Virus record (IMG/VR): IMGVR_UViG_3300035698_035310
Span: 295,045 to 359,044 of that record
Direction: 5' to 3' (one strand)
DNA: 64,000 nt
Of the stretch, positions 18,239 to 50,909 are shown in pieces. Below the pieces are notes generated by a model. It was not told the origin of the DNA. It was given only the letters and a program-made list of their open reading frames with translations, and did no database searches. Position 1 is the first letter of the stretch. Every line of letters starts with the position of its first letter. Made by a program: the position numbers and the translations under genes.

Positions 18239-18913
18239 TTATTCAATCATCCCTTTTTCAATATAAGATATAGTCCATTTTTTATGAGTATAACAACCTC
18301 TACCACCTCTTGCGATAGCCGCCATCCTTCCTTTATTGAGATTATATTTTCGGCAAAATCTAGTGAGATTTATTCTCGTAAAGCGCGTACCTTCGGGACT
18401 TATAGCCGTGAACCACTTTGCTTTACTATTTCGCACCGAATCTTTTTTATTCATTCCACCCATTATCAATGGCTTCCCCAATCTATTTGGGCGCGGAACG
18501 CCAGCAGCAGCCTTACCGGTTTGCTTTCTACCCGCGCAACTATACGCGGTTGGATTATGATTATATCCATTATCCAACCAAATAAATGGTTTATGTTTGT
18601 CAAGATAACGTTGCTCACAATCAATCAATATCTGTTTCGCTACATCTGGATGTACATCATCAATATCGCACTCTTCTAATATTTCCCAAATAAACCCACT
18701 AGAGCCATATTTTCGCAGAGCATTGACAAATGGCATATGAGCATGCTCTGTTCTTTTTATTGAATATTCATGACCAGCCCAACGGTTGCGAATGTCCTTT
18801 CCGCTACCGATATATATTTTTCCATTAGTTTTATTAGTTATTATATAGACACCAGCAATACCAGATGGTATAGATGTTGTTATGGTCGTGTGTTTGAATC
18901 TAAATTTTTTCAT
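18239..18913 (-). mobile_element. Free-standing GIY-YIG homing endonuclease
   Basis: GVYIITN..NGKIYIGS...R...H and EQRYLD...GYN motifs; antisense insertion right after the ATPase. Confidence 0.85.
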
Positions 18914-18924
18914 GACATGTTACC

Positions 18925-19020
18925 TATAAATAGAGTATGGGTGCGTATTGGTCTATTACCTAGCCAATCAGTTATATAAGTGTCCGCTTATATGACTCGC
19001 CCTTTCTTTATATTATTTAT
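18925..19020. ncRNA. Structured element (three-way junction) upstream of the GIY-YIG gene
   Basis: Stems GGGTGCG/CGCCC, ATTGGTCTA/TAGCCAAT and AGTTATATAAG/CTTATATGACT, flanked by TATAAATA and TATTTAT. Confidence 0.5.
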
Positions 19021-19042
19021 CATATATTGTATAAATAATACT

Positions 19043-19279
19043 ATGAGAGCAAAAGAATTTATATTAGAATACGCCATAGGCAACAAAACTGATTTCACAC
19101 AGATAAGTGCGCCATGTGATGCGTGTCACGGAACTGGCAACACTGATACCGGTGGGGGGAGTGAAACCTGCCAAGCATGCAAAGGCGTGGGCACACAAGA
19201 TAAAACAGATAACACTGGATATGCGATGGATAAAGACCATCAATCATTACAAGGCACCTATGCGGGTGGAGGATTTTAA
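19043..19279 (+). CDS. Small protein with DnaJ-type CxxCxGxG zinc-finger repeats
   Basis: ATG 19043 (MRAKEFILE) just after TATAAATA (19030-19037); CDACHGTG and CQACKGVG. Confidence 0.7.
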   Translation: MRAKEFILEYAIGNKTDFTQISAPCDACHGTGNTDTGGGSETCQACKGVGTQDKTDNTGYAMDKDHQSLQGTYAGGGF

Positions 19280-19510
19280 ATGAGAGCACATGAATTTATA
19301 GTAGAAGAAGATGATGATTTAGACGAAGGAAATGCCGAAAATGCCAAAGCACTGGTTGGCTCCGGTAAAGCAGATTCTAATGGTAAAAAAACAAATTCAG
19401 ATTCCGCAGATCATAAAGCAGTTCGAACTCCTGGAACTGGTCCTGAATCAAGAACAAAATCCAACAATGGAGCACCTCCCGGTGCAAATCCCGGTTTTAC
19501 CGGTGGTTAA
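19280..19510 (+). CDS. Small low-complexity protein
   Basis: MRAHEFIVE N-terminus shared with the upstream gene. Confidence 0.7.
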   Translation: MRAHEFIVEEDDDLDEGNAENAKALVGSGKADSNGKKTNSDSADHKAVRTPGTGPESRTKSNNGAPPGANPGFTGG

Positions 19511-19579
19511 TATATTGACATCAATATAACATATACGATACACTACATATAATAAAAATAAACAATATGGAGTAGATAT

Positions 19580-20755
19580 ATGCCCGTTCGCGATCAAGAA
19601 GCACTCGATTTATTAACCACTGCTAGAATATCATTACTGATTAAGCAGCCATTTTTTGGCATCTTAGGAATGAATTTAGAATTAGTTGAAGCAAGTGTCA
19701 AAGAAGCAGAAAAGATGACTACTGCCGCCGTTGATGGTAGACATCTATGGTATAATCCAGAATTTATAAAATCGTTAACTGAAGGAGAAATAAAATTTCT
19801 TGTTGGTCATGAAATAATGCATTGTGTTTTTAAGCATATACGAAGAAGATTTGATCGCGATCCCAAAATATATAACATGGCAGCAGATTATGTCATCAAT
19901 GCGTTATTGATCAATGAAGGGTTCACTAAACCTAAAATTGGACTATATAATGAAAAGTATCTTAATTGGTTTGCTGAAGATGTATATGATGAATTAGTAG
20001 AAACTGGTGCTGAACCTAGCCCCACATTAGATCATCATCCAGGCGACCCCGGTTATCCCGGCGAGGAAGGCGAAGATGGTGAGGGAAGGTCTGATGAAGA
20101 GCAACAACGAATAGAAGATGATTGGACTGATAATCTTATTAAAGCGTCTTTGGCAGCAGGCGATGTTCCATTAGGCATACAACGATTGATCAAAGACCTT
20201 ATTGATCCAAGAATGGATTGGCGTCAATTGCTTCAAATGCATCTACAAAGTTGCATTAGAACCGATTACACATGGATGCGCCCAAATAAAAGAACCTTTG
20301 GTATGGGTATAACTATGCCATCTATGGATATGGATGACATGGTGGAAATATGTGTTGCAATTGATACATCTGGTTCTGTGTCTCAAACTATGTTACAAGA
20401 TTTCTTATCTGAAATCAAAGGCATTATGGATACTTTCAGTGGATATAAAATACACATCGCTTGTTTTGATACAGAAATTCATAATCCTGCAACGTTCGAC
20501 ACCGAAGATGATTTGATGTCATATGAATTAGCGGGTGGTGGTGGAACTGATTTCATGGCATATTGGAATTTTGCGATAGAACAAGATTGGATTGGCGATG
20601 TTCGTAAATTATTATTTTTCACCGATGGAATGCCTAATGGTGATTGGGGAATTGATAATGTTGTAGATACATTATGGATTGTTCACGGTAGCACCAACGA
20701 AGGACCATTTGGTCATACTGCATTTTACGACGATCATAAAAAGGAGCAAGTGTAA
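19580..20755 (+). CDS. vWA-domain / DUF2201-type metallopeptidase-like protein (MoxR partner)
   Basis: TAAVDG, HEIMH (HExxH), MIDAS DTSGS, GGGGTDF and FFTDG. Confidence 0.85.
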   Translation: MPVRDQEALDLLTTARISLLIKQPFFGILGMNLELVEASVKEAEKMTTAAVDGRHLWYNPEFIKSLTEGEIKFLVGHEIMHCVFKHIRRRFDRDPKIYNMAADYVINALLINEGFTKPKIGLYNEKYLNWFAEDVYDELVETGAEPSPTLDHHPGDPGYPGEEGEDGEGRSDEEQQRIEDDWTDNLIKASLAAGDVPLGIQRLIKDLIDPRMDWRQLLQMHLQSCIRTDYTWMRPNKRTFGMGITMPSMDMDDMVEICVAIDTSGSVSQTMLQDFLSEIKGIMDTFSGYKIHIACFDTEIHNPATFDTEDDLMSYELAGGGGTDFMAYWNFAIEQDWIGDVRKLLFFTDGMPNGDWGIDNVVDTLWIVHGSTNEGPFGHTAFYDDHKKEQV

Positions 20756-21033
20756 TGAGAGCTACAATAGACGACTTGAGATATAAAAATGCTGCTGCCA
20801 GAAACAGAAATGAGTTAATGAATATGATAAAATGGCGACCTAAAAAAGTAGAACTACCTACACCTACGCCTACACGAAAATTTAAATTTTTATTAGATAA
20901 CAGTCTAATGATAAGTGCTATATTTGCATGCGTTGGCATTGTGATGATGTTTGGTGCTATTTTATATACTGCGCAAAAAAATACAGAACAACTAACTGCA
21001 ATAGAACAATATATTATAAAAAACGACAGATAA
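20755..21033 (+). CDS. Small membrane protein
   Basis: Hydrophobic segment LMISAIFACVGIVMMFGAILY. Confidence 0.65.
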   Translation: MRATIDDLRYKNAAARNRNELMNMIKWRPKKVELPTPTPTRKFKFLLDNSLMISAIFACVGIVMMFGAILYTAQKNTEQLTAIEQYIIKNDR

Positions 21034-21366
21034 ATGGGAAAACGCATATCAGATAACACGTGGAGATATTTAAAGAAAAATACTCCTGATATTATTGATG
21101 GTTTACCAATAGTAACTATCAAACTTGATAGGCATAATATATTTCCAAATCACTTTTTGTTAAAATATAAACATAAATCAAAAACTAATTCCGAACGTTA
21201 TGGTGTTGAATTAGGGCCAGCGATAGATTGGTTGGATGAAAATACCAATGACGAATATTATGTAGAAATGGGTGATGACGAAGATAGATTAAAAAATATA
21301 ATAATATATTTTCACGAAGAAAGCGATGCTATGGCATTTAAATTAGTTCTAGGAGAAAAAACTTGA
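21034..21366 (+). CDS. Hypothetical protein (DAxxFKL family)
   Basis: DWLDE...YF..ESDAMAFKL. Confidence 0.7.
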   Translation: MGKRISDNTWRYLKKNTPDIIDGLPIVTIKLDRHNIFPNHFLLKYKHKSKTNSERYGVELGPAIDWLDENTNDEYYVEMGDDEDRLKNIIIYFHEESDAMAFKLVLGEKT

Positions 21367-21400
21367 CATAATACATGCGTTGTTGTATTATGTATAAATA
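21363..21400 (+). promoter_or_regulatory. Composite promoter of the NAD operon
   Basis: TTGACA-N17-TATTAT followed by TATAAATA (21393-21400). Confidence 0.65.
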
Positions 21401-21490
21401 GAAATGAAACTAGATGCAAATCAGTTTCATTATGGATTCGAAAGGGTCACAAAATTATAATCTTTAACCCATTTAACGTGAGGTGATAAA

Positions 21491-22666
21491 ATGAGCAAAT
21501 CAACTAAATCCACTTTCGTGCAAGAGCGCACAGATAAGTATTTCACAAAAACTAAAAATATTGTAGATATGTTTGGCGATAAAATCGTTACATATGCAGT
21601 ATTTCAACGTCGTGCAGTTATAGCAGCAACCAAGCTAGCGGTAGAACTGATCAAAGAACATTGTCCAGAGGCTACCGTGGTAGTTCATTACGAAGATGGC
21701 ACGCTTGTTCCACCACAATCCAAAATTATGTCTATCACTGTATCAATGAGTAAATTTGTTGAACTTGAAACATTGTGCCTACAGCGTGTTGGATTTACCC
21801 AAGTATGCGCCTACAATGCTTATAAGATGAGTATGGCACTTCCACACGTTCCATTCATGGATATGCACGGGCGACACGGGACAGGCGACGATATGATGAT
21901 TGCTGCCGCTTACGGTGCTTCCGTTGGATCGCGAACTGCGCGGATGCAGGGCGCTAAAGGTTTTGTTGGTACTTCCAACGATCTTACCGCACACTACTTC
22001 CCTATCAAACAAGGTATCGGAACTATGCCACACGCTGCTGTTGGTTACGCTGGAAGTAACATGAGGGCGATGGAAATGTTTGTTGAAGCCAATCCTGATG
22101 ACAAAAACCTTGTTTCATTGGTTGATTACTTCGGAAAAGAAACAACCGAAGCACTTGAAGTATCCAAATGGTTTTATGATAAAGAATTGGATAAAAAAGG
22201 TAAAACTTTGGGTATGCGCCTTGATACACACGGTGGTCGTTTTGCCGAGGGTCTTGATTATGAAAAATCAGTTGAGATTGTATGTAACTGGCTTAAAGTA
22301 AATCCTACCGATGAATACGCTGCTGTGCGTAAGGTTATTGGTGATGCGGTATTCGATGCTGCGGCTGATGACTATATCGACAAGGTTCGTAAAATTTTGT
22401 TTGGAACTGGTGTAAGTGCGGCAAACATTATCAATATGCGCGAACAGTTGAATAACAAAAAGTTTAACAATGTCGCAATTGTTGCAAGTTCTGGCTTTGA
22501 TTTGTTCAAGTGTACCATTATGGCACAAGTGAACGCACCAATCACCATGGTCGGAACCGGCTCATTCTTGCCTAAAACCCTAAGTGAAACATATGCAACT
22601 GCTGATATCGTTCAATATGGCGATACCCCTTCCGTTAAGGTTGGACGCGAATGGTTGCTGGATTAA
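21491..22666 (+). CDS. Nicotinate phosphoribosyltransferase-like protein (PncB/NAMPT superfamily)
   Basis: TDKYF, GTS, GTMPHA, LVDY, RLDTHG, ASSGF and GTGS type II PRTase motifs; operon with nadE, nadM-like and pncA. Confidence 0.8.
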   Translation: MSKSTKSTFVQERTDKYFTKTKNIVDMFGDKIVTYAVFQRRAVIAATKLAVELIKEHCPEATVVVHYEDGTLVPPQSKIMSITVSMSKFVELETLCLQRVGFTQVCAYNAYKMSMALPHVPFMDMHGRHGTGDDMMIAAAYGASVGSRTARMQGAKGFVGTSNDLTAHYFPIKQGIGTMPHAAVGYAGSNMRAMEMFVEANPDDKNLVSLVDYFGKETTEALEVSKWFYDKELDKKGKTLGMRLDTHGGRFAEGLDYEKSVEIVCNWLKVNPTDEYAAVRKVIGDAVFDAAADDYIDKVRKILFGTGVSAANIINMREQLNNKKFNNVAIVASSGFDLFKCTIMAQVNAPITMVGTGSFLPKTLSETYATADIVQYGDTPSVKVGREWLLD

Positions 22667-22678
22667 CGGAGTAGTAAC

Positions 22679-23047
22679 ATGAATAAATTAGGATGGCTTT
22701 TTAAAACGGTATTTGACGCTAATCGCGAACGATCCCTTAATACGATAGAAAGACGTATGGGAAAACTTAGCGAAGAACACGGTGAGTTATGGGAAGCATA
22801 TCTTAATGTAACTAGCGCCAACAATGGCAAAAATAAAACATGGCATGATGTGCGCGAAGAAGCCATCGATTCAGTCATTGTTGCGCTAGATGTTATGGCT
22901 ACACGTTTGCCCATTGATGAGGGTAAAACTGACGAAGAAATTGAAGAAGAAATCGTTGAAGTTGTTAACGTAAAAATGGAAAAATGGAAAAAGACTAAAA
23001 CTTGTAAGACTGATGCGGTATCAGAGGATGCTACAGATGCCAATTGA
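22679..23047 (+). CDS. MazG-like nucleotide pyrophosphohydrolase
   Basis: KLSEEHGEL...EEAID...K..KW. Confidence 0.75.
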   Translation: MNKLGWLFKTVFDANRERSLNTIERRMGKLSEEHGELWEAYLNVTSANNGKNKTWHDVREEAIDSVIVALDVMATRLPIDEGKTDEEIEEEIVEVVNVKMEKWKKTKTCKTDAVSEDATDAN

Positions 23048-23318
23048 AAAATATGAATTGCGTGATGGTGAAGAATACATTGATGAATATATCAATGAAG
23101 AAGGAAAGCACGTAACCATCGTTAAAGAATCGAGTGGTAATATAATTCATGGATGGGTTATGGACATCGATCCAGCAGATTATGCACTTATTGAGAAAGC
23201 CGCAGCACTGGAAGGTGTGGATATACAAGATTTTATTGACAGCGCTATAAAATCTGCTATACTGTTAGCAATAGACGAAGTTAATATGAAATCAGCAATA
23301 GAGGATATATCAGACTAA
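23037..23318 (+). CDS. Hypothetical protein (possible ribbon-helix-helix)
   Basis: GAGGA RBS before ATG 23037; DYALIEKAAALEG...DFI. Confidence 0.55.
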   Translation: MPIEKYELRDGEEYIDEYINEEGKHVTIVKESSGNIIHGWVMDIDPADYALIEKAAALEGVDIQDFIDSAIKSAILLAIDEVNMKSAIEDISD

Positions 23319-23587
23319 TGGAAGATTTTAAAGAATATACTGAAGAACAATGCTACAAAGACGAGCGCCCCGATAACGATACACGTGTTACATATTTTAA
23401 ACACAAGGGCGACAAAAAAGCATATTCAGTAACGGTAGCCGATGTTACATTGCAATTATCCGAAGAAATAGAACGTCAGGATCGTGGCACATTTAAAGAG
23501 TTCGCTGCGTTATTGCTGAATAAACATCTAACAGAAGAACGAGAAATTGAAGGAGTTAAAAGTTTCTTTGATGAAATTTCAGACTAA
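23318..23587 (+). CDS. Hypothetical protein
   Basis: TAATG coupling with the previous gene; 89 aa. Confidence 0.65.
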   Translation: MEDFKEYTEEQCYKDERPDNDTRVTYFKHKGDKKAYSVTVADVTLQLSEEIERQDRGTFKEFAALLLNKHLTEEREIEGVKSFFDEISD

Positions 23588-23609
23588 TCGATAAGGAAGG
23601 AATACAAAA

Positions 23610-24101
23610 ATGATTAAACGATTCATACATATGCTTTGCCGGTGGTTTAAAATTCACGCTTATGATTTTCCGATGGCTGGAAATACTGCAACTATGATTC
23701 TTTATAATCCCGAGAGAAAAGAGGTATTGTTGGGGTTGAGAAGTGAAGATTCTGATGCATTTCCAAATCGTTGGTCACTTCCCGGTGGATATCTTAATGT
23801 TGGTACGGAACGCATGACGAGAGTTGCATCACGTGAAACAAAAGAAGAAGTTAATCTTGATATCGATGAATGGCGGTGGAATATATTTTATCTTGATGAT
23901 GAAATCGGAACCGACCCACGATATACACAAGTCATTAATATTTGTTATGATGCAATTGTGAGCGAGGCTCATGAATATGATAACCCTGTAGCGGGAGATG
24001 ACCTACGAGACGTTGAATGGTATTCAATTGAAAATGCTTTAAAAGTTGATCTACCATTTAATCACAATACTATTTTACGAGAGTTTGTTCAACAACTCTA
24101 A
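23610..24101 (+). CDS. NUDIX hydrolase (ADP-ribose pyrophosphatase-like)
   Basis: WSLPGG...RETKEE Nudix box; DPR, AGDD and LPFNH resemble the NadM-Nudix/NrtR ADPRase domain. Confidence 0.85.
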   Translation: MIKRFIHMLCRWFKIHAYDFPMAGNTATMILYNPERKEVLLGLRSEDSDAFPNRWSLPGGYLNVGTERMTRVASRETKEEVNLDIDEWRWNIFYLDDEIGTDPRYTQVINICYDAIVSEAHEYDNPVAGDDLRDVEWYSIENALKVDLPFNHNTILREFVQQL

Positions 24102-24166
24102 AAAATAAAACCAATGCAATAATGCATTAGGTATTACATAAACTTCAATCCCAAGGAGGGTTAGAA

Positions 24167-25219
24167 ATGACAAAACCAAAAAACACAATACTTGAAATTA
24201 GTCGACAAGATCAAATGGGCGCACTATCGCCGTGGTTTGATAAACATCTTGATATTTGTATTGATGATGGATATTTCGGCAGTGAAAAACTTCTAACAGA
24301 TATAGGCAATCATATCATCGAAGATTTGATAGCATATCGCATACAAACCGGTATTAGCACAGTCATTCTTGGTATGAGTGGTGGCGTCGATAGCGCATTA
24401 ACCGCCGCATTATTTAAAAGAGCAGGGTGGAAAGTGATTGGGGTTACAATGCCCATACATCAAGACCCTGAAGAAACAACACGTGGCGTTGATGCATGTG
24501 AAGCACTAGGCATCGAACATAAACATATCGATTTAACCTCGCTGTATAACGATGCCACTACTTCATTGGGTGATTTGGATGGTTTATTAGACGATGCGAA
24601 CGAAACAAATAAAGCAGTTCTTATTCGCCGTGGCAACGTTAAAGCACGGTTGCGTATGATTACATTATACAACCTTGCTGCAATGCATGGTGGTTTGGTT
24701 GCAAGCACTGATAACTATTCCGAACTAGCCGCTGGCTTCTGGACATTGCATGGCGACGTGGGTGATTTAAGCCCCATACAAAGCCTTACTAAGTCTTGGG
24801 AAGTGCCAATGCTTGCAAAACTATTCGGCGTTCCTGAAGAAACGTGGCGTGCAAAACCAACCGATGGATTGGGGGTTGATGCTGGTGATGAAGCACAATT
24901 CGGATTCACTTATCTTGAACTCGACCTTATGCTGTTAGCGATTGGTGATTTTTCTGCTGATGGATATAAAGACGATGAAATGCAAGAATTGGGTGGTGTC
25001 AATCGTGAAAATTTATTCAAAGTTATGGACGGTGATATCGATAAAGATGGACGCGCCACAACCGTGTTTAATAAATTATTGGATAGAATGGGAAGTTCGT
25101 GGTTTAAGCGTCACGGAACTGTTAATATAAAGCACCCATATGATAGCAGCCGTTATAATAGATTGGAACGCGTCGATTATGATCAATTTGTTCCACAAGT
25201 TATAAAAAGGAGCAACTGA
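24167..25219 (+). CDS. nadE: NH3-dependent NAD+ synthetase
   Basis: GMSGGVDS, GNVKARLRM, T.HGD..D and KPTDGL...DE; no glutaminase domain. Confidence 0.9.
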   Translation: MTKPKNTILEISRQDQMGALSPWFDKHLDICIDDGYFGSEKLLTDIGNHIIEDLIAYRIQTGISTVILGMSGGVDSALTAALFKRAGWKVIGVTMPIHQDPEETTRGVDACEALGIEHKHIDLTSLYNDATTSLGDLDGLLDDANETNKAVLIRRGNVKARLRMITLYNLAAMHGGLVASTDNYSELAAGFWTLHGDVGDLSPIQSLTKSWEVPMLAKLFGVPEETWRAKPTDGLGVDAGDEAQFGFTYLELDLMLLAIGDFSADGYKDDEMQELGGVNRENLFKVMDGDIDKDGRATTVFNKLLDRMGSSWFKRHGTVNIKHPYDSSRYNRLERVDYDQFVPQVIKRSN

Positions 25220-25220
25220 T

Positions 25221-26171
25221 ATGTCCCAATGGAAAAATATTAAATGTATCGAAAGTGCCGAAGGTAATGTAAGCAAGTTCGTATACACAAATGATACCGC
25301 AGTAGCAGAATCAGTTTTATACAAATATCCTGATTACAAATCACGGACAGTTATTTGTTGCTCAACAATGAGTGGATGTCCAGTTGGATGCCGCTTCTGT
25401 GGTGCTGGCGACTATTTCGTAAAATCACTTTCCGGTGAAGAAATCATTTCACAGGTTAAGTATTCCATCGATCAAACTGGTGTCGATCCTGCTACAATGG
25501 GTAGATTGCAAATCATGTTTATGTCTATGGGTGAGCCACTTCTTAATAAGAATGGTCTATCTGAAGCATTGAAGAAATTATATTTCATGTACCCAAATGC
25601 TGCATTGCTTATTTCCAGCATTGGACCAGATGTTGATTATGAATGGTTGATGGAACTAAGTGAACGTATCCCCACTATTGGATTACAGTTTTCCGTTCAT
25701 GAAGCAACCGATGAACGCCGTGACGCACTTATTCCATTCAAGAAAAAATTAACATTGGATGGTATTACGAAAGTTGGCGCTGAATGGAATAAACGAACCG
25801 GACGTAAACCGTATTTCAATTACTGTGCGGGTGATGAAAACTCATCTAGTGGCGATGCATTTAAAATGCGCAAACTGTTTGATCCAACCATTTGGAATGC
25901 GACAATAAGTGTTATATGTGAGCGAAATGAAGGTCTTCCAGCACGCAACGAACATCAACGCGAGTTGGCTTGTGATTTTTCTAGCAAATTACTTGAACTT
26001 GGTTTTGACGTCAGAGTTTTTGATCCAGCCGGTCAAGACGACACTGGCTCAGGCTGTGGTCAATTATGGTTTGTTCAGCGATGGATGGTAGACAATCCAG
26101 AGAAATCTAAACCAAGCATAGGTCATGGCATGGATAAAATACACGTGCCTACATTGGAGGTGGCATCATGA
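25221..26171 (+). CDS. RlmN/Cfr-like radical SAM methyltransferase (short form)
   Basis: ICCSTMSGCPVGCRFC, MSMGEP, SVH and terminal GCGQL; both RlmN-type catalytic Cys equivalents are present. Confidence 0.8.
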   Translation: MSQWKNIKCIESAEGNVSKFVYTNDTAVAESVLYKYPDYKSRTVICCSTMSGCPVGCRFCGAGDYFVKSLSGEEIISQVKYSIDQTGVDPATMGRLQIMFMSMGEPLLNKNGLSEALKKLYFMYPNAALLISSIGPDVDYEWLMELSERIPTIGLQFSVHEATDERRDALIPFKKKLTLDGITKVGAEWNKRTGRKPYFNYCAGDENSSSGDAFKMRKLFDPTIWNATISVICERNEGLPARNEHQRELACDFSSKLLELGFDVRVFDPAGQDDTGSGCGQLWFVQRWMVDNPEKSKPSIGHGMDKIHVPTLEVAS

Positions 26172-26845
26172 GCATACACAGAGTAGGGCTATCAGTAATG
26201 CGTGCACAACCATTTCACAAAGGGCATGAAGCAATCATTAACACGATGATATCTGAATGCGAAACTGTGGTTGTGTGTTTAGGTAGTGCGCAAAAATCAA
26301 GAGAAAAACATGATCCATGGACAATTGAAGAACGCATCGATATGATTCAACGTGTATATGGTGCATATAACAATAAAGGTGAATTTCTTGGTAGTAGAGT
26401 TAAAATCATTCCGTTGACTGATATTGGGGCTGCTACTCCACAAAAGTGGGTTAGTTATATTGTTGAAAAGATTGAGAAACTCGGTCTTCCTGAACCGACT
26501 GATTATTTTACTGGTTCAGAGTTTGACGCTGCATGGTTTAGAGATCATTTTGCCGCCGATTGGCGTGCATTAGAAGGACATTATTATAATCAATCTAAAG
26601 AGAAAGTAAATGGACAACCATCTGTTGAAGGCAATTCATATGAACGATATGTGGGTGAAAATGGAATATTTAGACGTTTACATAACATCCAACGACAAGA
26701 AAACAGAATTCCATCTGCTACGGAATTGCGTGGATTTATGGAATTGCGGTTGAATGATTGGAAAGAATGGATTGCAACTGTAAATCATGAAACACTTGAT
26801 GAAACATATCCAGACGAATTTAAAGTTCCAATGGATAACGAATAG
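26168..26845 (+). CDS. NadM-like nicotinamide/nicotinate mononucleotide adenylyltransferase
   Basis: RAQPFHKGH (HxGH), GSAQ...DPWT..ER and SATELR. Confidence 0.85.
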   Translation: MSIHRVGLSVMRAQPFHKGHEAIINTMISECETVVVCLGSAQKSREKHDPWTIEERIDMIQRVYGAYNNKGEFLGSRVKIIPLTDIGAATPQKWVSYIVEKIEKLGLPEPTDYFTGSEFDAAWFRDHFAADWRALEGHYYNQSKEKVNGQPSVEGNSYERYVGENGIFRRLHNIQRQENRIPSATELRGFMELRLNDWKEWIATVNHETLDETYPDEFKVPMDNE

Positions 26846-26847
26846 AG

Positions 26848-26876
26848 TTGACAATCTCTTAAAAATGTTATAATAT
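26848..26876 (+). promoter_or_regulatory. Sigma70-like promoter of pncA
   Basis: TTGACA-N17-TAATAT (TATAAT at 26869). Confidence 0.6.
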
Positions 26877-26933
26877 AAACATAGCGTTACCATTAAGGAA
26901 TGCTAATCATACTACCAATTGGAGGAGTATAAA

Positions 26934-27599
26934 ATGAGAAAATTTGAACAAGGAAATTTTAAACTTGCAGTAATCGTAGACGCACAAGAGGATTTTGTGT
27001 TGTCGACAGGTGCATTGCCCGTTCCGGGTGCAGAGGCATTGATTCCAGATATGGAAGAATACCTTAAAAATATAACATTGGAAAATGGATATGTAGGTGC
27101 GCTGTTTACCGCAGACACGCATAATGAAAAAGATTATCCTGAATCCAAAGAAGCCAAAGGCGATCCTGATGCCGTTGAACCAATTCCAGGTTTTCCACCA
27201 CATTGCATGCAAGGAACTGATGGTTTTAAATTTGCCATTAACCCTGCTAACGTAGCAATGGATAATAATGTTGGGCGTTTTATTCTCAACAAAGGCGTAT
27301 TTAATATGTGGGAAGAAGATAACATCGTTGTTCGACCTTTGGTGTTGGATGGTGAGCCGGTTTCTTATGGCGGTGCACAAGACCGAAATGAATTCTTCGA
27401 AACACTAAAATCAAATGGAATCGAAGACGTTGAAATCGTTGGATTTGCTGCTGATTACTGTGTTATGTGGGCAATTGCTGGATTTGTTGCACGCGGATTC
27501 AATGTTACACTTTATGATAATCTTACTGCTGGTATCGCAAAAGATATTCATGCAGTGGTGGAAACAGAATTTTCTAAAGAGAACGTACAAGTTCTTTAA
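26934..27599 (+). CDS. pncA: Nicotinamidase / pyrazinamidase
   Basis: GGAGGAG RBS; VDAQEDF, DTH, PPHC..GT.G, KG and GFAADYCV catalytic motifs. Confidence 0.9.
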   Translation: MRKFEQGNFKLAVIVDAQEDFVLSTGALPVPGAEALIPDMEEYLKNITLENGYVGALFTADTHNEKDYPESKEAKGDPDAVEPIPGFPPHCMQGTDGFKFAINPANVAMDNNVGRFILNKGVFNMWEEDNIVVRPLVLDGEPVSYGGAQDRNEFFETLKSNGIEDVEIVGFAADYCVMWAIAGFVARGFNVTLYDNLTAGIAKDIHAVVETEFSKENVQVL

Positions 27600-27613
27600 A
27601 GAAAATATTGAAA

Positions 27614-27641
27614 CAGTGGAGGGAATTATACCCCTCCACTG
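27614..27641 (+). terminator. GC-rich hairpin after pncA (no U tract)
   Basis: CAGTGGAGGG-N8-CCCTCCACTG. Confidence 0.5.
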
Positions 27642-27644
27642 CTC

Positions 27645-27974
27645 ATGTCTAATATAAAGGATATAATGATGCGATATTATCATAGCAATATATATAAAAG
27701 CAAAAATTGGTTGGAAACAGATGCGACTGATCCAAAAAAAGTAATAGAAGATTATTACTATGATCGTTGTGAAGTTCCAGATGCTGATGTGTGCGGCGAT
27801 GCTACCGTCCATTTCGTTTTTTTTATTAATGGTGTAAACGTATATTATGTGTTATCATATTCATGGTATATTGATTACGAACCAGAATGGTGCATAAATA
27901 ATGATCATTATGTTGAAGAAGTAAGTGAACCAACATACAAATTTCCTGGCGATAGGGATTGGATCAATGTTTGA
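27645..27974 (+). CDS. Hypothetical protein
   Basis: 109-aa ORF, co-oriented with neighbours. Confidence 0.55.
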   Translation: MSNIKDIMMRYYHSNIYKSKNWLETDATDPKKVIEDYYYDRCEVPDADVCGDATVHFVFFINGVNVYYVLSYSWYIDYEPEWCINNDHYVEEVSEPTYKFPGDRDWINV

Positions 27975-28344
27975 TATTTTACATATTCAAAAATGGGTAT
28001 ATCATATTGCGTTGAGACTTTATGGATGGAAATCCATTGATACTGCGCCAACAGACGGAACCAGTGTTATAATTCTCGAAAATATGCAATTAGAATATTG
28101 GAATGTTTTCGAAGCGCAATATATTAATGAAGAGCCATTACCTGGATGGAGAGGGGTATATGTAGCAAAATATGTTGGCGCAGATGAAACTAAACCACAT
28201 TATGTATCAAAAACTCTCGTCACAATTCCTGAATATTGGAAACCGATGCCAAAATCACCACGGTTTTATAAATTATGGTGTTTCGCATGCAATGATATTC
28301 AAGTAAAAATAGAGGAAGAAGAAGAAAAATGCCAACATACTTAG
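27967..28344 (+). CDS. Hypothetical protein (WxxIxTAPxDG / DUF551-like)
   Basis: WKSIDTAPTDGT...YWKPMPK; likely start ATG 27967. Confidence 0.65.
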   Translation: MFDILHIQKWVYHIALRLYGWKSIDTAPTDGTSVIILENMQLEYWNVFEAQYINEEPLPGWRGVYVAKYVGADETKPHYVSKTLVTIPEYWKPMPKSPRFYKLWCFACNDIQVKIEEEEEKCQHT

Positions 28345-28787
28345 AAGCAATAAACACAGATAATTTTATTTTAACAGGAAATAGAAGAACTATATTTTTA
28401 GCTGGTGGCATCACTGGATGCGTAGATTGGCAAAAAGTATCTAAAGATGCACTAATGGCATCAAACAAATATAAAATAATTTGCAATCCACGCCGTGCAG
28501 ATTTTGACGTAACTGATCCAACTGCATCTGAAAAACAAATTAAATGGGAAGCTGATCATTTAAAAATATGCACAGATATATTGTTTTGGTTTTCTAGTGA
28601 AACCATCCAACCAATTGCATTATTTGAATTGGGGAAATACCTCAATGAAAAAGATAATATTTTTGTTGGCTGCGATCCAGATTATTCAAGAAAATTTGAT
28701 GTTATTACACAGGTTGGTATATATAGACCAGACATCAAAGTGTGGGATAATTTAGATGATATGATGGAACATATTGTTTCATCATGA
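28329..28787 (+). CDS. Nucleoside 2-deoxyribosyltransferase-like protein
   Basis: IFLAGGI...DWQ, NPRR, QIKWE and PIALFELG. Confidence 0.8.
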   Translation: MPTYLEAINTDNFILTGNRRTIFLAGGITGCVDWQKVSKDALMASNKYKIICNPRRADFDVTDPTASEKQIKWEADHLKICTDILFWFSSETIQPIALFELGKYLNEKDNIFVGCDPDYSRKFDVITQVGIYRPDIKVWDNLDDMMEHIVSS

Positions 28788-29695
28788 AAAATAAACACAC
28801 TCCATTATATGATCCAGAAATAGCCAAAAAAATAACTGAAATTGGTAGACGTATTTTATATGAAATGAAAAAGGAAATGAAAAAAATGGAATCATTATTT
28901 GATGTAAATGGTCTAATGTTTTGGACGCAGCGCGAAATACGATTGCGCGAATCGTTTGCAAAACATTTTTCAGAAGAACTACACAATGCATTATTATATG
29001 AAAATAGAGCATGGGAATTTATTCAATTTGAAGGACCGCAACTAACCCCACGTTCAGCCATTAATCCCAACTATACAAATGATGATATATGGGTTCAACA
29101 AAACCATAGTAATATGAAAATAGGTGAACCATTTCCTGAAATTAGTAGCGATTTAGTTCTTCGACCCGAAACAACGCCTTCATCATACGTATATGCTAGA
29201 CATTTGTTAGACACCCATAGTGGAATTAAGCCACCATTTGTCATATGGCAAACTGGTAAAAGTTTTAGACGCGAACAAGATCAGGTGATAAAAAATATGC
29301 GCCTAAAAGAATTCTATCAACAAGAATTTCAATGCATATATACCGCTGATACAAAAAATGATTACCAAGAAGCCGTATTAGAGCCAGTTAGAAAAATGAT
29401 TGGTGAAATGGTAAACCTACCAACACGATTGGTGGAAAGCGATAGATTGCCTTCTTATAGCAAACGTACAATGGATGTGGAAGTTTGGATATCTGATAAC
29501 ATTAACGAGCCAGGATTCATATCTGACACTGGAAGATGGATGGAAGTTTGTTCGATATCTAAACGAACTGATTTTCCTGGTACAGTGAAATTCCAAACCA
29601 AAAATAAAATAGTCGAAAAAGATTTAGAAGTGCTTGAGGTCGCAATCGGATTAGACAGAATAAATTATTGCTTTGAACAAGGAAATATAAAATAA
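28784..29695 (+). CDS. Class II aaRS catalytic core, glycyl-tRNA synthetase (alpha2 type)-like, lacking the anticodon-binding domain
   Basis: LRPET, QTGKSFRRE (motif 2), RLKEFYQQEFQ, EVCSIS.RTDF and VLEVAIGLDR (motif 3), then the stop. True start may be ~28885. Confidence 0.75.
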   Translation: MKNKHTPLYDPEIAKKITEIGRRILYEMKKEMKKMESLFDVNGLMFWTQREIRLRESFAKHFSEELHNALLYENRAWEFIQFEGPQLTPRSAINPNYTNDDIWVQQNHSNMKIGEPFPEISSDLVLRPETTPSSYVYARHLLDTHSGIKPPFVIWQTGKSFRREQDQVIKNMRLKEFYQQEFQCIYTADTKNDYQEAVLEPVRKMIGEMVNLPTRLVESDRLPSYSKRTMDVEVWISDNINEPGFISDTGRWMEVCSISKRTDFPGTVKFQTKNKIVEKDLEVLEVAIGLDRINYCFEQGNIK

Positions 29696-29783
29696 TATAA
29701 GTATTCCATTTATATTGACAATGATGCGATATATCTATAATATTAAAATACAAAAAATAAAATAATAACAAAGGAGAAATAAA

Positions 29784-30410
29784 TTGGATCAAGAACAAAT
29801 GAATTTAATACCAATGGTAGTGGAAACTACAGCAAAAGGCGAACGAGCCTATGATATATTTTCGAGAATGTTGCGTGAAAGAATTATCTTTCTTAATGGA
29901 CCTGTGAATGATACCGTAGCCAGTTTGGTTGTGGCACAAATGTTATTTTTGGAATCAGAAAATCCATCAAAAGATATTTCTTTTTACATCAATAGCCCCG
30001 GTGGCGTAGTTACTGCGGGTATGGCAATTTATGACACTATGCAATATATTCGCCCTAATGTATCCACTGTTTGTATTGGTCAAGCAGCATCCATGGGATC
30101 GTTGTTATTGGCGGCTGGTGCAGAAGGTAAGCGTTTCGCACTACCTAATGCAAGAATTATGATTCACCAACCATCAGGCGGCGCACAAGGACAGGCATCT
30201 GATATTGAAATTCAAGCAAAAGAAATCATTCGCATAAAGAAAGATTTGACACAAATTTACGTTGATCACGGCGTTAAAGAAAAATCATATGAAGATTTTC
30301 TTGCAGCAATGGATCGTGATAATTTTCTATCTGCCACTGAAGCAGTTGAAGAATGGGGTATAATTGATGCGGTGGTTGATTCAAGACCGCCAGTTGAAGA
30401 AAACGATTAA
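29784..30410 (+). CDS. clpP: ATP-dependent Clp protease proteolytic subunit (host-like)
   Basis: LIPMVVE...[29 protein letters not shown] and MDRDNF. Confidence 0.95.
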
Positions 30411-30413
30411 TAT

Positions 30414-31352
30414 TTATGGAAGGAGTGATTTGCGTTGCTCCTTCCATTCACTCTCCCATATAACTATTAACTTATAACCCATAGATTTTATTTTATTTTC
30501 ACGTTGTGTAGTTTTTTCATATAATTCACCATAAGTCGTTTTCGTTATTGGATGAACATCTATCATATCAAATTTATTGGGATTCCCATGCCAAAAATCA
30601 CCATGATATTCATATACAGTGTTGCTTTTTAAATCATAACCATCAACTATAACAATATTATCATCGATTTTGATTTGCACCTGACGATGATTCACGTCAT
30701 TCGGCAAACCAATATAATCCAACCAAGCAGTTTCTTGATTAGACAATCTTTTAGAACATGACGGACATCCAGAACCGGCGCATAAATGTGAACTTGGTGT
30801 TTGAAAAAATGCACCATGCCTTGGGCATATAATTTTAATTTTTTCATGTGAATTTTTATATATCATATAACTATAATCATATTTGTCACTATGTATTATA
30901 TTGGATTCTGTTATAAATATTTTATCTGTTTTTTTAAATAGTGTATTCATTTTCTCATTGACGCATATGCGACATCCATATCCTTGAAGATGGTTAGCCG
31001 GACTAATTTTAAAATTACCATGTTTGCTACAAGTCACAATAACTTTTTTATGCGATGTTTTATATTTTGTAAATTTATAATTGTATATATTATTATGTTT
31101 TTCATTGGCTTCTGATACAAAAGAACTATTTGTTTTTCTACAAGATATTCTTCTTTTATTATCAGCACATGTAGGACATTCTTGTCCTTGTGTATGATTA
31201 CTCGGCGTCATAACAAATTTGTCGTGATTGCTGCACAATATTATTATATTATGCTTATTATTGATATAGTCAACTAACGAATAATCATATTTATTGCCAT
31301 GTATTTTTATGGCATTCATTATAAATTCATTAGTTGTTAATTTTCTTGTCAT
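30414..31352 (-). mobile_element. Putative homing endonuclease (DUF723-like Zn repeats plus PD-(D/E)XK/Vsr-like nuclease)
   Basis: Three H..KYDYS...I.C..HG.F...P..H..G..C..C repeats and C-terminal VDGY...YEYHGDFWHG; antisense after clpP. Confidence 0.75.
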
Positions 31353-31368
31353 TTCATTAACTCCTGTT

Positions 31369-31459
31369 TATAAATATATATGAGGGACAACAGGCAAAAC
31401 TTCTGTGCCTGCGATATTAATATGTGGAGTATTAATATCTTACCTCTAATGCTATTTAT
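31369..31459. ncRNA. Structured element (three-way junction) upstream of the endonuclease gene
   Basis: Stems GAGG/CCTC, CAGGCA/TGCCTG and GATATTAATAT/GTATTAATATC, flanked by TATAAATA and TATTTAT. Confidence 0.5.
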
Positions 31460-31471
31460 CTTTAAATTTCA

Positions 31472-31499
31472 TTGACATTTCCTTATTTTCTGTTATAAT
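31472..31499 (+). promoter_or_regulatory. Sigma70-like promoter
   Basis: TTGACA-N16-TATAAT. Confidence 0.65.
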
Positions 31500-31529
31500 A
31501 CATCAAATAATAACAAAGGAGGACATATA

Positions 31530-45339: not shown

Positions 45340-45462
45340 AAATTATTGGGATATCTATTTTTCACTTGACAAAACATTATATTCATTGTATAAATAATAT
45401 CATATAAGCCATATTTTACAGGTGTGGCAAACACCCCAATAGGAAATATGGAGATTATCATG

Positions 45463-50757: not shown

Positions 50758-50771
50758 GCTGTAACTCCCTT

Positions 50772-50824
50772 ATAGTTATAGATTAGGTGGGGATTGCCGT
50801 CCCGCGACCTATATAACTATTTAT
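50772..50824. promoter_or_regulatory. Long hairpin between a late-promoter-like ATAAATA (minus strand) and the endonuclease RBS
   Basis: Nested stems ATAGTTATA/TATAACTAT, TAGGT/ACCTA and GGGAT/GTCCC. Confidence 0.55.
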
Positions 50825-50909
50825 CAGATTGGGCTGACTTTTAACATCGCTATATTGACAATATATGATCGATGCTGTAAACTTAACTATAAAAAAATGA
50901 GACTAAACT

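What the first reader, a model, noticed from the sequence alone, without database searches (positions are those of the whole stretch)
18925..31459. Two unrelated endonuclease genes share a three-way-junction element bracketed by inverted late-promoter motifs
Upstream of the GIY-YIG gene (18925-19020) and the DUF723-like nuclease gene (31369-31459) the plus strand has the same layout. It runs TATAAATA, P1 5' arm (GGGTGCG or GAGG), P2 hairpin, a single C, an 11-bp AU-rich P3 hairpin, P1 3' arm (CGCCC or CCTC), then TATTTAT. The fold is shared with almost no sequence identity. G-U pairs in P3 form on the plus strand, antisense to the nuclease mRNA, while ATAAATA on the minus strand points into the nuclease gene. 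Established: T4 homing endonucleases use late promoters and RBS hairpins. Inference: a more elaborate element, either an antisense or partner ncRNA, a translational switch, or a DNA structure marking the mobile cassette end.
Basis: partly seen in the sequence, partly recalled or inferred. Interest (0 to 1): 0.68.

Follow-up and report, generated by a model that had tools for sequence, protein, structure and literature searches.

The report
Antisense RNA module guarding phage homing endonucleases
The two look-alike folds are real. They belong to a family of at least 19 small three-armed elements placed just upstream of unrelated homing-endonuclease genes in uncultured giant phages, and each carries in one loop a copy of its own nuclease's ribosome-binding region, which most likely marks a built-in antisense RNA that holds nuclease translation in check.

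Summary
The 359-kb genome holds 10 such 3WJs and 4 single-hairpin relatives, all 14 at the 5' end of a homing-endonuclease-like gene. Nine more 3WJ sites (seven distinct sequences) lie in other metagenomic phage contigs. Orientation is fixed relative to the nuclease, not to the genome strand.

Subfamily alignments show compensatory base-pair changes, and conserved G·U pairs exist only on the strand antisense to the nuclease.

New finding: the P2 loop repeats 7-10 nt of the adjacent nuclease's own Shine-Dalgarno/spacer region. The repeat is copy-specific (permutation p<1e-5) and changes in step between close homologues.

On the antisense strand, the nuclease-proximal TATAAATA sits 17-18 nt after a TTGACA-like -35 box in 13 of 19 copies. 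It therefore looks like the -10 of a sigma-70-type promoter, often overlapping the nuclease start codon. The distal RATAAATAG box has no -35 and resembles a T4-type late promoter.

Best reading (about 0.45): a cis-encoded antisense RNA whose loop pairs with the nuclease ribosome-binding site, analogous to IS10 RNA-OUT. No RNA data exist, so transcription is inferred. No Rfam or sequenced-phage match was found.

The parts
18239..18913 (-). GIY-YIG homing-endonuclease gene (224 aa), nuclease 1
   Evidence: Pfam GIY-YIG E=9e-10. PHROG homing-endonuclease families.
18920..18926 (.). Ribosome-binding-region copy TTACCTA. On the - strand this reads TAGGTAA and holds the SD of nuclease 1. It overlaps the first two bases of the proximal box.
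   Evidence: Identical 7-mer in the P2 loop.
18925..18932 (+). Nuclease-proximal box TATAAATA, site 1. No -35 match in this copy.
18939..19002 (+). Three-way junction 1: P1 18939-18943/18998-19002, P2 18947-18968, P3 18970-18997
   Evidence: MFE fold, z = -3.38 on the + strand and -2.18 on the - strand.
18956..18962 (+). P2 apical loop string TTACCTA, a repeat of the nuclease-1 RBS region. As RNA from the + strand it is complementary to that RBS.
19014..19021 (-). Nuclease-distal box GATAAATA, read on the nuclease strand. Candidate late-type promoter lacking a -35, pointing into nuclease 1.
30414..31352 (-). Hef-like (DUF4379 treble-clef / HNH-type) homing-endonuclease gene (312 aa), nuclease 2. 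The genome holds about 8 paralogues.
31346..31351 (+). -35-like hexamer TTGTCA, overlapping the nuclease-2 start codon on the opposite strand and lying 17 nt upstream of TATAAA
31359..31367 (.). Ribosome-binding-region copy AACTCCTGT. On the - strand this reads ACAGGAGTT and holds the SD of nuclease 2.
31369..31376 (+). Nuclease-proximal box TATAAATA, the candidate -10 of the antisense-strand promoter
31382..31446 (+). Three-way junction 2: P1 31382-31385/31443-31446, P2 31391-31411, P3 31413-31439
   Evidence: MFE fold, z = -3.52 on the + strand. Found by covariance model R1 at 30.4 bits.
31398..31406 (+). P2 loop string AACTTCTGT, matching the RBS-region copy at 8 of 9 positions. The single difference would be a U.G wobble in an antisense-loop/RBS duplex.
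31452..31460 (-). Nuclease-distal box GATAAATAG, read on the nuclease strand
31472..31499 (+). Perfect sigma-70-type promoter (TTGACA-16-TATAAT with TG) for the downstream RNA ligase gene, immediately after the element
50784..50825 (+). Single-hairpin relative of the element (hairpin 50784-50811, distal box 50817-50825), upstream of a third nuclease, the GIY-YIG gene at 49873-50757 (-)
   Evidence: The hairpin sequence is conserved in other phage contigs.

Best explanation
Each element is a portable regulatory module attached to the 5' end of a free-standing homing-endonuclease gene (HEG).

**Proposed mechanism:**
- On the strand antisense to the HEG, a promoter fires away from the HEG. Its -10 is the proximal TATAAATA. 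Its -35 is usually TTGACA-like and lies over the HEG start codon or the SD-AUG spacer.
- The transcript is a structured RNA of about 70-90 nt. P1 closes a three-way junction, P3 is a long stabilising hairpin, and P2 presents a loop complementary to the cognate HEG's Shine-Dalgarno/spacer region.
- The HEG mRNA starts at the distal RATAAATAG box, which lacks a -35 and is T4-late-like. Its 5' leader is therefore the mirror image of this RNA.
- The antisense RNA pairs with the leader and, through the P2 loop, with the ribosome-binding site. This limits or delays nuclease translation.
- The logic resembles IS10 RNA-OUT/RNA-IN or a type I antitoxin.

**Shown in silico:** the conserved fold, covariation, strand-specific wobble pairs, HEG linkage, loop/RBS identity and the promoter-like sites.

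**Inferred:** that either strand is transcribed, the RNA ends, and repression itself.
For: 1. **Family and linkage.**
   - There are 10 three-way junctions and 4 single-hairpin variants in the genome, all next to HEG-like genes of at least four families.
   - Nine further 3WJ sites (seven distinct sequences) lie in other contigs, again upstream of HEG-like genes.
   - The one + strand HEG carries the element flipped.
   - Covariance model R1 finds only HEG-linked copies in the genome.
2. **Structure.**
   - Type I alignment: 96.3% of cells paired, 9 of 18 pairs with double changes, 0 of 500 shuffles as good.
   - Type II alignment: 94.1% paired, 7 of 17 pairs with double changes, 0 of 500 shuffles.
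3. **Strand.**
   - G.U pairs are conserved on the antisense strand: columns 26-45 in 5 of 6 sequences, and P1 ends in 5 of 6 and 4 of 6.
   - Inside helices, G.T outnumbers A.C 14 to 4.
   - The antisense strand folds more stably in 15 of 17 copies.
   - Mean z-score is -3.6 on the antisense strand against -2.9 on the sense strand.
4. **Loop = RBS copy.**
   - 16 of 17 copies share 6-10 nt with their own RBS region (15 exact strings and two 9-nt matches with one mismatch), always in the P2 loop and ending 5-10 nt before the ATG. Cognate beats non-cognate with permutation p<1e-5.
   - Predicted duplex energy is -15.4 kcal/mol for cognate pairs against -11.2 for non-cognate pairs, p<1e-5.
   - Two copies found with a pattern blind to loop and RBS (L074, L075) show 8 of 8 identity covering the spacer, not only the SD.
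   - Three homologue pairs changed loop and RBS in step.
   - All 4 internal mismatches are loop-A against RBS-G, which is a U.G wobble in the duplex.
5. **Promoter.**
   - 13 of 19 copies score at least 9/12 and 9 of 19 at least 10/12 for a -35/-10 pair. Shuffled controls give 0.36 copies at 10/12, maximum 4.
   - The -35 keeps its distance to the box while its register to the ATG varies.
Against: - There are no RNA data. Only DNA runs hold this genome.
- The candidate -10, TATAAA, lacks the conserved -7 T.
- 6 of 19 copies, including window site 1, have no -35.
- No canonical intrinsic terminator follows the fold, so a discrete small RNA is not established.
- The distal box as HEG promoter rests on resemblance to NATAAATA-type late promoters. 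No gp55 homologue was found in the 359-kb record, which appears to be a 359-kb cut of a 570-kb contig.
- z-scores separate the two strands only weakly.
- Two elements flank Hef-like genes with internal stop codons, so the element may have a role independent of the nuclease.
- In L074 and L075 the HEG is co-oriented with the upstream terminase gene. The antisense RNA there would need the box alone as its promoter.
Confidence: 0.45

Rival explanations
1. The functional strand is the nuclease mRNA itself. Transcription from the distal late-type box gives an mRNA whose 5'-terminal three-way junction protects it from 5'-end-dependent decay. The P2' loop displays a second Shine-Dalgarno copy as a ribosome standby or decoy site that tunes translation.
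For: - The distal box plus the following ~6 nt (ATAAATAGATATAG) is the best conserved sequence. It recurs in single-hairpin relatives that lack the proximal box.
- The spacing from the box to P1 is typically 6 nt.
- The sense strand also folds significantly better than shuffles, with mean z = -2.9.
- In type II copies the sense loop forms GNRA-like tetraloops (GGAA, GAAA).
- Loop copies carry A where the real SD has G, which would make them weaker SDs.
Against: - The conserved G.U pairs on the opposite strand become A.C mismatches on this strand.
- Loop/RBS identity extends into non-SD flanks and the spacer, and co-varies there. Binding by 16S rRNA does not require that.
- No conserved anti-SD segment or small ORF supports a cis switch.
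Confidence: 0.22
2. The element is a transcriptional adaptor for the phage backbone, similar to a PeSL. On the main coding strand it attenuates or terminates read-through coming across the antisense nuclease gene, and it supplies promoters for the downstream phage gene. The nuclease cassette can then sit in an operon without harm. The module also serves as a recombination point that moves cassettes.
For: - In at least 8 of 17 copies a canonical TTGACA-N16/17-TATAAT or TATACT promoter follows the element within 1-19 nt on the same strand.
- Several copies have a T-run right after the distal box.
- The module is shared by unrelated nuclease genes.
- The element stays intact beside two nuclease genes with internal stops.
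- PeSLs are known composite promoter + stem-loop cassettes in T4-type phages (PMC2839356, PMC4122927).
Against: - This does not explain why the P2 loop tracks the cognate nuclease RBS.
- It does not explain why orientation follows the nuclease even where neighbours are co-oriented with it.
- No terminator-like site was called at the two window elements.
- There are no HEG-free copies in the genome.
Confidence: 0.18
3. It is a DNA-level signal: a cruciform or three-way DNA structure, or paired protein-binding sites (the two identical 7-10-mers) marking the cassette end. It would serve homing, recombination or nuclease autorepression, as I-TevI binds an operator over its own promoter.
For: - The element has perfect 7-8-bp terminal inverted repeats.
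- It has copy-specific direct repeats.
- Autorepression by I-TevI at an operator resembling its homing site is documented (PMC2988022).
Against: - Conserved G.T wobble positions and strand asymmetry point to RNA rather than duplex or extruded DNA.
- The repeats are short for homing-endonuclease recognition.
- The repeats always coincide with the SD/spacer and a hairpin loop, across at least four unrelated nuclease families.
Confidence: 0.07

Closest known systems
IS10/Tn10 RNA-OUT / RNA-IN antisense control of transposase (from my own knowledge, not tested here)
   Same: - A mobile element's DNA-cutting enzyme gene has face-to-face promoters at its 5' end.
- The inner promoter makes a small, stable, structured antisense RNA.
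- The loop of that RNA pairs with the translation-initiation region.
   Different: - Here the RNA is a three-way junction rather than a single stem-loop.
- The antisense promoter sits on the RBS and start codon, so the overlap excludes the RBS.
- A separate loop carries the anti-RBS string.
- The targets are homing endonucleases in lytic giant phages.
- Nothing has been shown experimentally.
T4-type regulation of homing endonucleases: RBS-sequestering hairpin plus internal late promoter (I-TevI/II/III, segB, Aeh1 mobE). Review PMC2988022.
   Same: - A TATAAATA-like box and an RNA structure lie just upstream of a phage HEG.
- The purpose is probably to restrict nuclease translation.
- seg43(25) of Aeromonas phage 25 also has a strong hairpin that does not cover the RBS.
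   Different: - The RBS is outside the structure.
- The structure is a junction of three helices.
- A second, opposed box with a -35 is present.
- The loop repeats the RBS rather than pairing with it in cis.
CfrI antisense RNA of cyanophage S-PM2 (Millard et al. 2010, cited via PMC12197685 and PMC2984593)
   Same: An antisense RNA in a T4-like phage runs opposite a homing-endonuclease gene (named F-ChpI in PMC12197685).
   Different: CfrI is about 225 nt and overlaps the HEG and the psbA 3' end. I did not compare it with this element, and its function is reported as unknown (PMC2984593).
PeSL (promoter-early stem-loop) cassettes of T4-type phages (PMC2839356, PMC4122927)
   Same: - Small composite promoter + stem-loop modules are repeated through the genome.
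- They are associated with accessory genes.
- They can shuffle between unrelated ORFs.
   Different: - PeSLs have a single G/C-rich stem-loop and face the gene they serve.
- This element is HEG-specific, is oriented by the HEG, is bracketed by inverted ATAAATA boxes, and carries the RBS copy.
P1/P7 c4 antisense RNA and type I toxin-antitoxin sRNAs (from my own knowledge)
   Same: A short structured RNA uses loop sequences to occlude the RBS of a harmful gene encoded next to it.
   Different: - c4 lies on the same strand as its target.
- Type I toxins are small membrane peptides.
- There is no sequence or Rfam similarity.

Membership tests
T4-type HEG translational control (RBS hairpin + internal late promoter) | The RNA hairpin includes and sequesters the Shine-Dalgarno sequence of the nuclease ORF. 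| tested here: not met
   The SD lies 0-12 nt beyond the proximal box, outside P1-P3, in all copies.
T4-type HEG translational control (RBS hairpin + internal late promoter) | A late promoter TATAAATA on the nuclease strand is placed so that late transcripts lack the 5' arm of the hairpin. | tested here: not met
   The RATAAATAG box lies upstream of the whole junction, typically 6 nt before P1, so a transcript from it would contain the complete fold.
T4-type late transcription | The phage encodes a gp55-like late sigma factor. | tested here: inconclusive
   T4 gp55, phrog_234 and phrog_12791 give no match at E<=1-10 in the 359-kb record. The record appears to be a cut of a 570-kb contig, and the rest could not be searched.
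Cis-encoded antisense RNA control (IS10 RNA-OUT type) | A promoter on the antisense strand lies inside the 5' region of the target gene. | tested here: inconclusive
   Promoter-like -35/-10 pairs occur in 13 of 19 copies, far above shuffled controls. However, the -10 is TATAAA, 6 copies lack a -35, and there are no transcript data.
Cis-encoded antisense RNA control (IS10 RNA-OUT type) | The antisense RNA has a conserved stable structure. | tested here: met
   Covariation in two independent subfamily alignments and conserved G.U pairs on that strand. Mean z = -3.6.
Cis-encoded antisense RNA control (IS10 RNA-OUT type) | A loop of the antisense RNA is complementary to the target's translation-initiation region. 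| tested here: met
   Copy-specific 6-10-nt complementarity in 18 of 19 copies, p<1e-5, with in-step changes between homologues.
Cis-encoded antisense RNA control (IS10 RNA-OUT type) | Both RNAs are made, and the antisense RNA lowers target translation. | not testable with these tools
   Only DNA metagenome runs hold the sequence.
Intrinsic (rho-independent) terminator | A G+C-rich hairpin is followed directly by a U-tract. | tested here: not met
   The consensus scan calls no terminator-like site at either window element. The tail after P1 is CUAUAUCUAUUUAU-like, about 55% U.
Any curated RNA family (Rfam 15) | Match to a covariance model. | tested here: not met
   There is no hit in the window at gathering score and no hit at the elements at E<=1 in 8 loci. 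Only tRNAs matched.
PeSL cassette | A strong sigma-70-like promoter adjoins a single stem-loop terminator, flanks accessory ORFs, and faces the downstream gene. | tested here: inconclusive
   A sigma-70-type promoter follows the element in at least 8 of 17 copies. However, the fold is a junction, the element is tied to HEG orientation, and termination is untested.

The most novel reading that the evidence does not exclude
A previously undescribed class of cassette-specific 'anti-nuclease' RNAs. It would be a portable three-way-junction antisense RNA gene that travels with, and is swapped between, unrelated homing-endonuclease genes in uncultured giant phages. One loop is re-tuned in each cassette to match that nuclease's own ribosome-binding site, and the promoter's -35 box is written into the nuclease's first codons (ATGTCAA = reverse complement of TTGACAT). 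If so, selfish nucleases in phages would carry their own programmable silencer or antidote, comparable to type I antitoxins and IS10 RNA-OUT.
Probability: 0.42. Interest if true: 0.8.

Novelty: new variant of a known kind. Interest (0 to 1): 0.74.

Why it matters
- **Regulation of homing endonucleases.** These enzymes are the main selfish DNA-cutting genes of large phages. How the phage tolerates dozens of them is known only for a few T4 cases, where hairpins hide the RBS. This module would be a second, RNA-based solution.
- **Modularity.** The module is shared by GIY-YIG, Hef-like, HNH-type and other nuclease families. It occurs in phages from salt-lake and other metagenomes.
- **Testable rule.** The loop sequence equals the RBS sequence, which is a clean prediction to test.
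- **Motif status.** It is a candidate new RNA family with covariation support and no match in Rfam.
- **Coding constraint.** It gives an example of an antisense promoter constraining the first codons of a protein.
- **Practical uses.** It marks free-standing nuclease cassettes in metagenomic phage contigs. It also suggests a compact, re-targetable translational repressor design.

Tried and rejected
- **Close relatives.** Megablast of both regions against 50,697 phage records found nothing. blastn with one element found nothing meaningful. A peptide-pattern search with the neighbouring AAA ATPase found nothing. Distant Hef-like loci (L013-L018) lack the element. I could therefore compare no empty site and could not map cassette borders.
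- **Reads.** The runs are salt-lake DNA metagenomes only. Laying 5,901 bases (within the 6,000-letter limit) gave identical low-depth fragments with no variants, joints or RNA.
- **Late sigma factor.** gp55 searches were blank. The 570-kb parent contig is not held.
- **T4 late-promoter reading of the proximal box.** TATAAATA is not enriched in the window. Elsewhere in the window it serves as a -10 behind a TTGACA (45366-45396).
- **Cis switch (anti-SD pairing alternately with the loop copy or the real SD).** A CUCCUU-like segment exists in L034 and L043 only, so this is not general.
- **Leader peptide after the loop SD.** No start codon sits at a usable distance in most copies.
- **Known ribozymes or riboswitches.** The junction has almost no unpaired conserved nucleotides, and Rfam gives no hit.
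- **One alignment of all 17 copies.** MAFFT was not structurally consistent. I therefore counted covariation on two subfamily alignments only, and left P2 of type II out because of a one-column slip.
- **Covariance model R1.** It misses the two most divergent copies, window site 1 and genome 206992.
- **Metagenome pattern scan.** Most of the 50 hits were chance matches and were discarded after folding.
- **Not used.** The large protein searches, structure prediction and complex prediction were not needed. No alternative genetic code was used.

Full report
**What is there**

The window is the last 64 kb of a 359,044-bp IMG/VR phage record with 36% G+C. The same sequence occurs in a 570,750-bp salt-lake metagenome contig.

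The order is TATAAATA, a short P1 arm, hairpin P2, a single C, an 11-12-bp A/U-rich hairpin P3, the P1 return arm, then TATTTAT.

RNAfold gives the three-way junction as the minimum-energy fold for both sites. On the + strand the z-scores are -3.38 and -3.52, with no shuffle out of 200 folding as well. On the - strand they are -2.18 and -4.03.

The genes on the left, both on the - strand, are a GIY-YIG nuclease (18239-18913) and a 312-aa Hef-like treble-clef/HNH homing endonuclease (30414-31352).

**It is a family, and it follows nucleases**

The genome has five GIY-YIG hits and about eight Hef-like paralogues. Folding the upstream region of each shows the same layout at several of them.

The pattern ATAAATA-N30-110-TATTTAT occurs 14 times in the genome, against roughly 1.6 expected from the word counts. 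Ten matches are three-way junctions. They start at genome positions 21476, 45988, 81255, 127561, 160187, 206992, 232121, 244316, 313970 (window 18926) and 326414 (window 31370). The other four are single-hairpin relatives.

Every match abuts the 5' end of a homing-endonuclease-like ORF. The families are GIY-YIG/SegE-like, Hef-like, phrog_23051/HNH and phrog_1271 HNH.

The only copy beside a + strand nuclease (206992) is flipped. Orientation is therefore fixed relative to the nuclease: distal RATAAATAG, junction, TATTTATA, SD, ATG on the nuclease strand.

A covariance model built from six copies finds seven of the ten genome copies and nothing that is not nuclease-linked. Rfam has no match.

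**Copies in other phages**

- A metagenome scan with a pattern taken from the distal side returned 50 stretches. Most were chance matches.
- Seven were new three-way junctions in independent contigs: L027, L034, L039, L040, L043, L051 and L070.
- A second pattern, which specified neither loop nor RBS, found L074 (also L072 and L076) and L075 in IMG/VR.
- For the seven copies with an intact downstream ORF, that ORF is again nuclease-like or a family seen beside other copies: phrog_23051/HNH, phrog_655, phrog_314, phrog_3339/559 and phrog_22655.
- The ORFs after L051 and L070 are cut short at 40 and 25 aa. In L070 a longer reading frame continues in another frame.
- No sequenced phage in the INPHARED set matches.

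**Structure is under selection, mostly on the strand antisense to the nuclease**

I used sequence-based MAFFT alignments of two subfamilies.

| Alignment | Cells paired | Pairs with changes on both sides | Shuffles reaching this |
|---|---|---|---|
| Type I (6 sequences) | 96.3% | 9 of 18 | 0 of 500 |
| Type II, P1 and P3 (6 sequences) | 94.1% | 7 of 17 | 0 of 500 |

Partners slid by one to three columns give 27-54% paired for type I and 20-56% for type II.

Several pairs are conserved G.U on the antisense strand. Type I columns 26-45 are G.U in 5 of 6 sequences. The type II P1 end pairs are G.U in 5 of 6 and U.G in 4 of 6. On the nuclease strand these would be A.C mismatches.

Further strand evidence:
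- Inside helices, G.T outnumbers A.C 14 to 4.
- The antisense strand folds more stably in 15 of 17 copies.
- z-scores separate the strands less clearly, at -3.6 against -2.9 on average.

**The loop repeats the nuclease's ribosome-binding region**

In 16 of 17 copies the best match between the region from box to ATG and the element falls in the apical loop of P2. The match is 6-10 nt and ends 5-10 nt before the ATG. It covers the Shine-Dalgarno sequence plus copy-specific flanks.

| Copy | Loop / RBS string |
|---|---|
| L034 | GTCAGGAGAA, both identical |
| L070 | AACAAAGGAA, both identical |
| e45988 | GCAAGGAAG, both identical |
| e244316 | ACCGGAAGG, both identical |
| Window site 1 | TAGGTAA, both identical |
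| Window site 2 | ACAGAAGTT (loop) vs ACAGGAGTT (RBS) |

- Cognate pairs beat non-cognate pairs with permutation p<1e-5.
- Written as RNA from the antisense strand, the loop is complementary to the RBS. Predicted duplex energy is -15.4 kcal/mol for cognate pairs against -11.2 for non-cognate pairs, p<1e-5.
- L074 and L075, found blind to this feature, show TTGGACTC twice and TTTGACTC twice. These strings cover half the SD and the spacer.
- Three pairs of close homologues changed loop and RBS in step: e160187/L051, L074/L075 and e127561/L070.
- All four internal mismatches are loop-A against RBS-G, which is a U.G wobble in an antisense duplex.

**The two boxes are not equivalent**

On the antisense strand the proximal box is TATAAATA in all ten genome copies, although the search required only ATAAATA. 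In 13 of 19 copies a TTGACA-like hexamer lies 17-18 nt upstream. Nine copies reach at least 10 of 12 matches, against 0.36 expected and a maximum of 4 in 2,000 shuffles.

This -35 keeps its distance to the box. Its register to the start codon varies. It overlaps ATGTCAA in several unrelated nucleases and lies in the SD-ATG spacer in others.

Window site 2 has TTGTCA-17-TATAAA. Window site 1 has no -35.

The distal box reads RATAAATAG on the nuclease strand. It has no -35 and is typically followed by 6 nt and then P1. It resembles the NATAAATA late promoters of T4-like phages (PMC2984593). The same ATAAATAGATATAG string heads a single conserved hairpin before Seg-like genes in other contigs.

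No gp55-like factor was found in the record. TATAAATA is not enriched in the window.

In at least 8 of 17 copies a canonical TTGACA-N16/17-TATAAT-type promoter follows the element on the antisense strand. One example is 31472-31499, ahead of the RNA ligase gene.

**Interpretation**

The simplest model that explains the fixed orientation, the strand-specific wobble pairs, the antisense-strand promoter and the copy-specific loop/RBS match is a cis-encoded antisense RNA. Its P2 loop would occlude the nuclease ribosome-binding site, with the nuclease mRNA starting at the distal box.

This works like IS10 RNA-OUT/RNA-IN. It is not a member of any described family.

It differs from the T4 scheme reviewed in PMC2988022, where a hairpin hides the RBS in cis. 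It also differs from PeSL cassettes (PMC2839356, PMC4122927). CfrI of S-PM2 is a reported antisense RNA opposite a phage homing-endonuclease gene (PMC12197685, PMC2984593). I did not compare it with this element.

**Cautions**

- Transcription of either strand is not shown.
- TATAAA lacks the -7 T.
- Six copies lack a -35.
- No canonical terminator follows the fold.
- Two elements sit beside nuclease genes with internal stops.
- In L074 and L075 the nuclease is co-oriented with an upstream terminase gene.

The main rivals are a sense-strand leader with a standby SD, a PeSL-like adaptor for backbone transcription, and a DNA-level signal. They are weighed in their own sections.

Noticed in passing
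window 50771-50825 with gene 49873-50757 (-): A third nuclease (GIY-YIG + NUMOD3 + I-TevI-type zinc finger) carries a single-hairpin version of the element: TATAGTTATAG, one hairpin, then CTATTTATC. The hairpin sequence (GGTCRCGG...CCCACC on the nuclease strand) is nearly the same after a TATAAATAG box in unrelated contigs (L019/L036, L061/L071, L032), and in L019 and L032 the next gene is Seg-like. A second genome copy lies at about 121915-121969.
   Followed up: partly
window 45366-45396 and gene 45424-46056 (+): An HNH endonuclease gene co-oriented with its neighbours has TTGACA-N17-TATAAATA directly upstream and no junction. TATAAATA therefore also occurs here as the -10 position of a sigma-70-type promoter.
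   Followed up: partly
L001 (genome 19500-25000): Two nuclease cassettes with elements (genome 21476 and 23577) sit inside an array of at least 15 tRNA genes. Several metagenomic copies (L034, L043) also appear to be followed by tRNA-like sequence. This recalls segB in the T4 tRNA cluster.
   Followed up: partly
genome 231416-232111 and 243558-244289 (L009, L010): Two Hef-like paralogues contain in-frame stop codons (TAA, TAG) and look like pseudogenes. Their elements are nevertheless intact, with perfect TTGACA -35 boxes and 8-9-nt loop/RBS identity.
   Followed up: no
whole record; loci L024, L056, L057, L069: The 359-kb IMG/VR record, classed as a 'provirus', carries the same sequence as four stretches of a 570,750-bp salt-lake contig (Ga0222634_1000003). 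The phage genome may therefore be much larger than the record, and genes such as a late sigma factor may lie outside it.
   Followed up: partly
several copies, e.g. genome 232102, 244298, 127542, 45965; L040, L070: Unrelated nuclease families start with ATGTCAA (Met-Ser-Arg/Thr/Lys). Its reverse complement is the -35 hexamer TTGACA of the antisense-strand promoter. A regulatory signal may therefore be constraining the first codons.
   Followed up: partly
L074 9754-12078 and L075 5322-6763: In two other phages the nuclease and its element lie directly after, or inside, terminase large-subunit coding sequence. The terminase appears to be in pieces in L075. This may be a nuclease insertion that splits a late essential gene.
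   Followed up: no
window 16979-18160, 19580-20755, 28784-32540: Nuclease 1 sits between a MoxR-like AAA ATPase and a DUF2201 metallopeptidase/VWA gene, a pair that usually works together. Nuclease 2 sits between ClpP (3 nt from its stop codon) and an RNA ligase gene. A class II aminoacyl-tRNA-synthetase-like gene lies just upstream.
   Followed up: no
window 18903-18913 (- strand): Just before the GIY-YIG start codon there is a two-codon ORF, ATGTCATGA, whose stop overlaps the real ATG. Its reverse complement gives ATGACA at the place where other copies have the -35 box.
   Followed up: no
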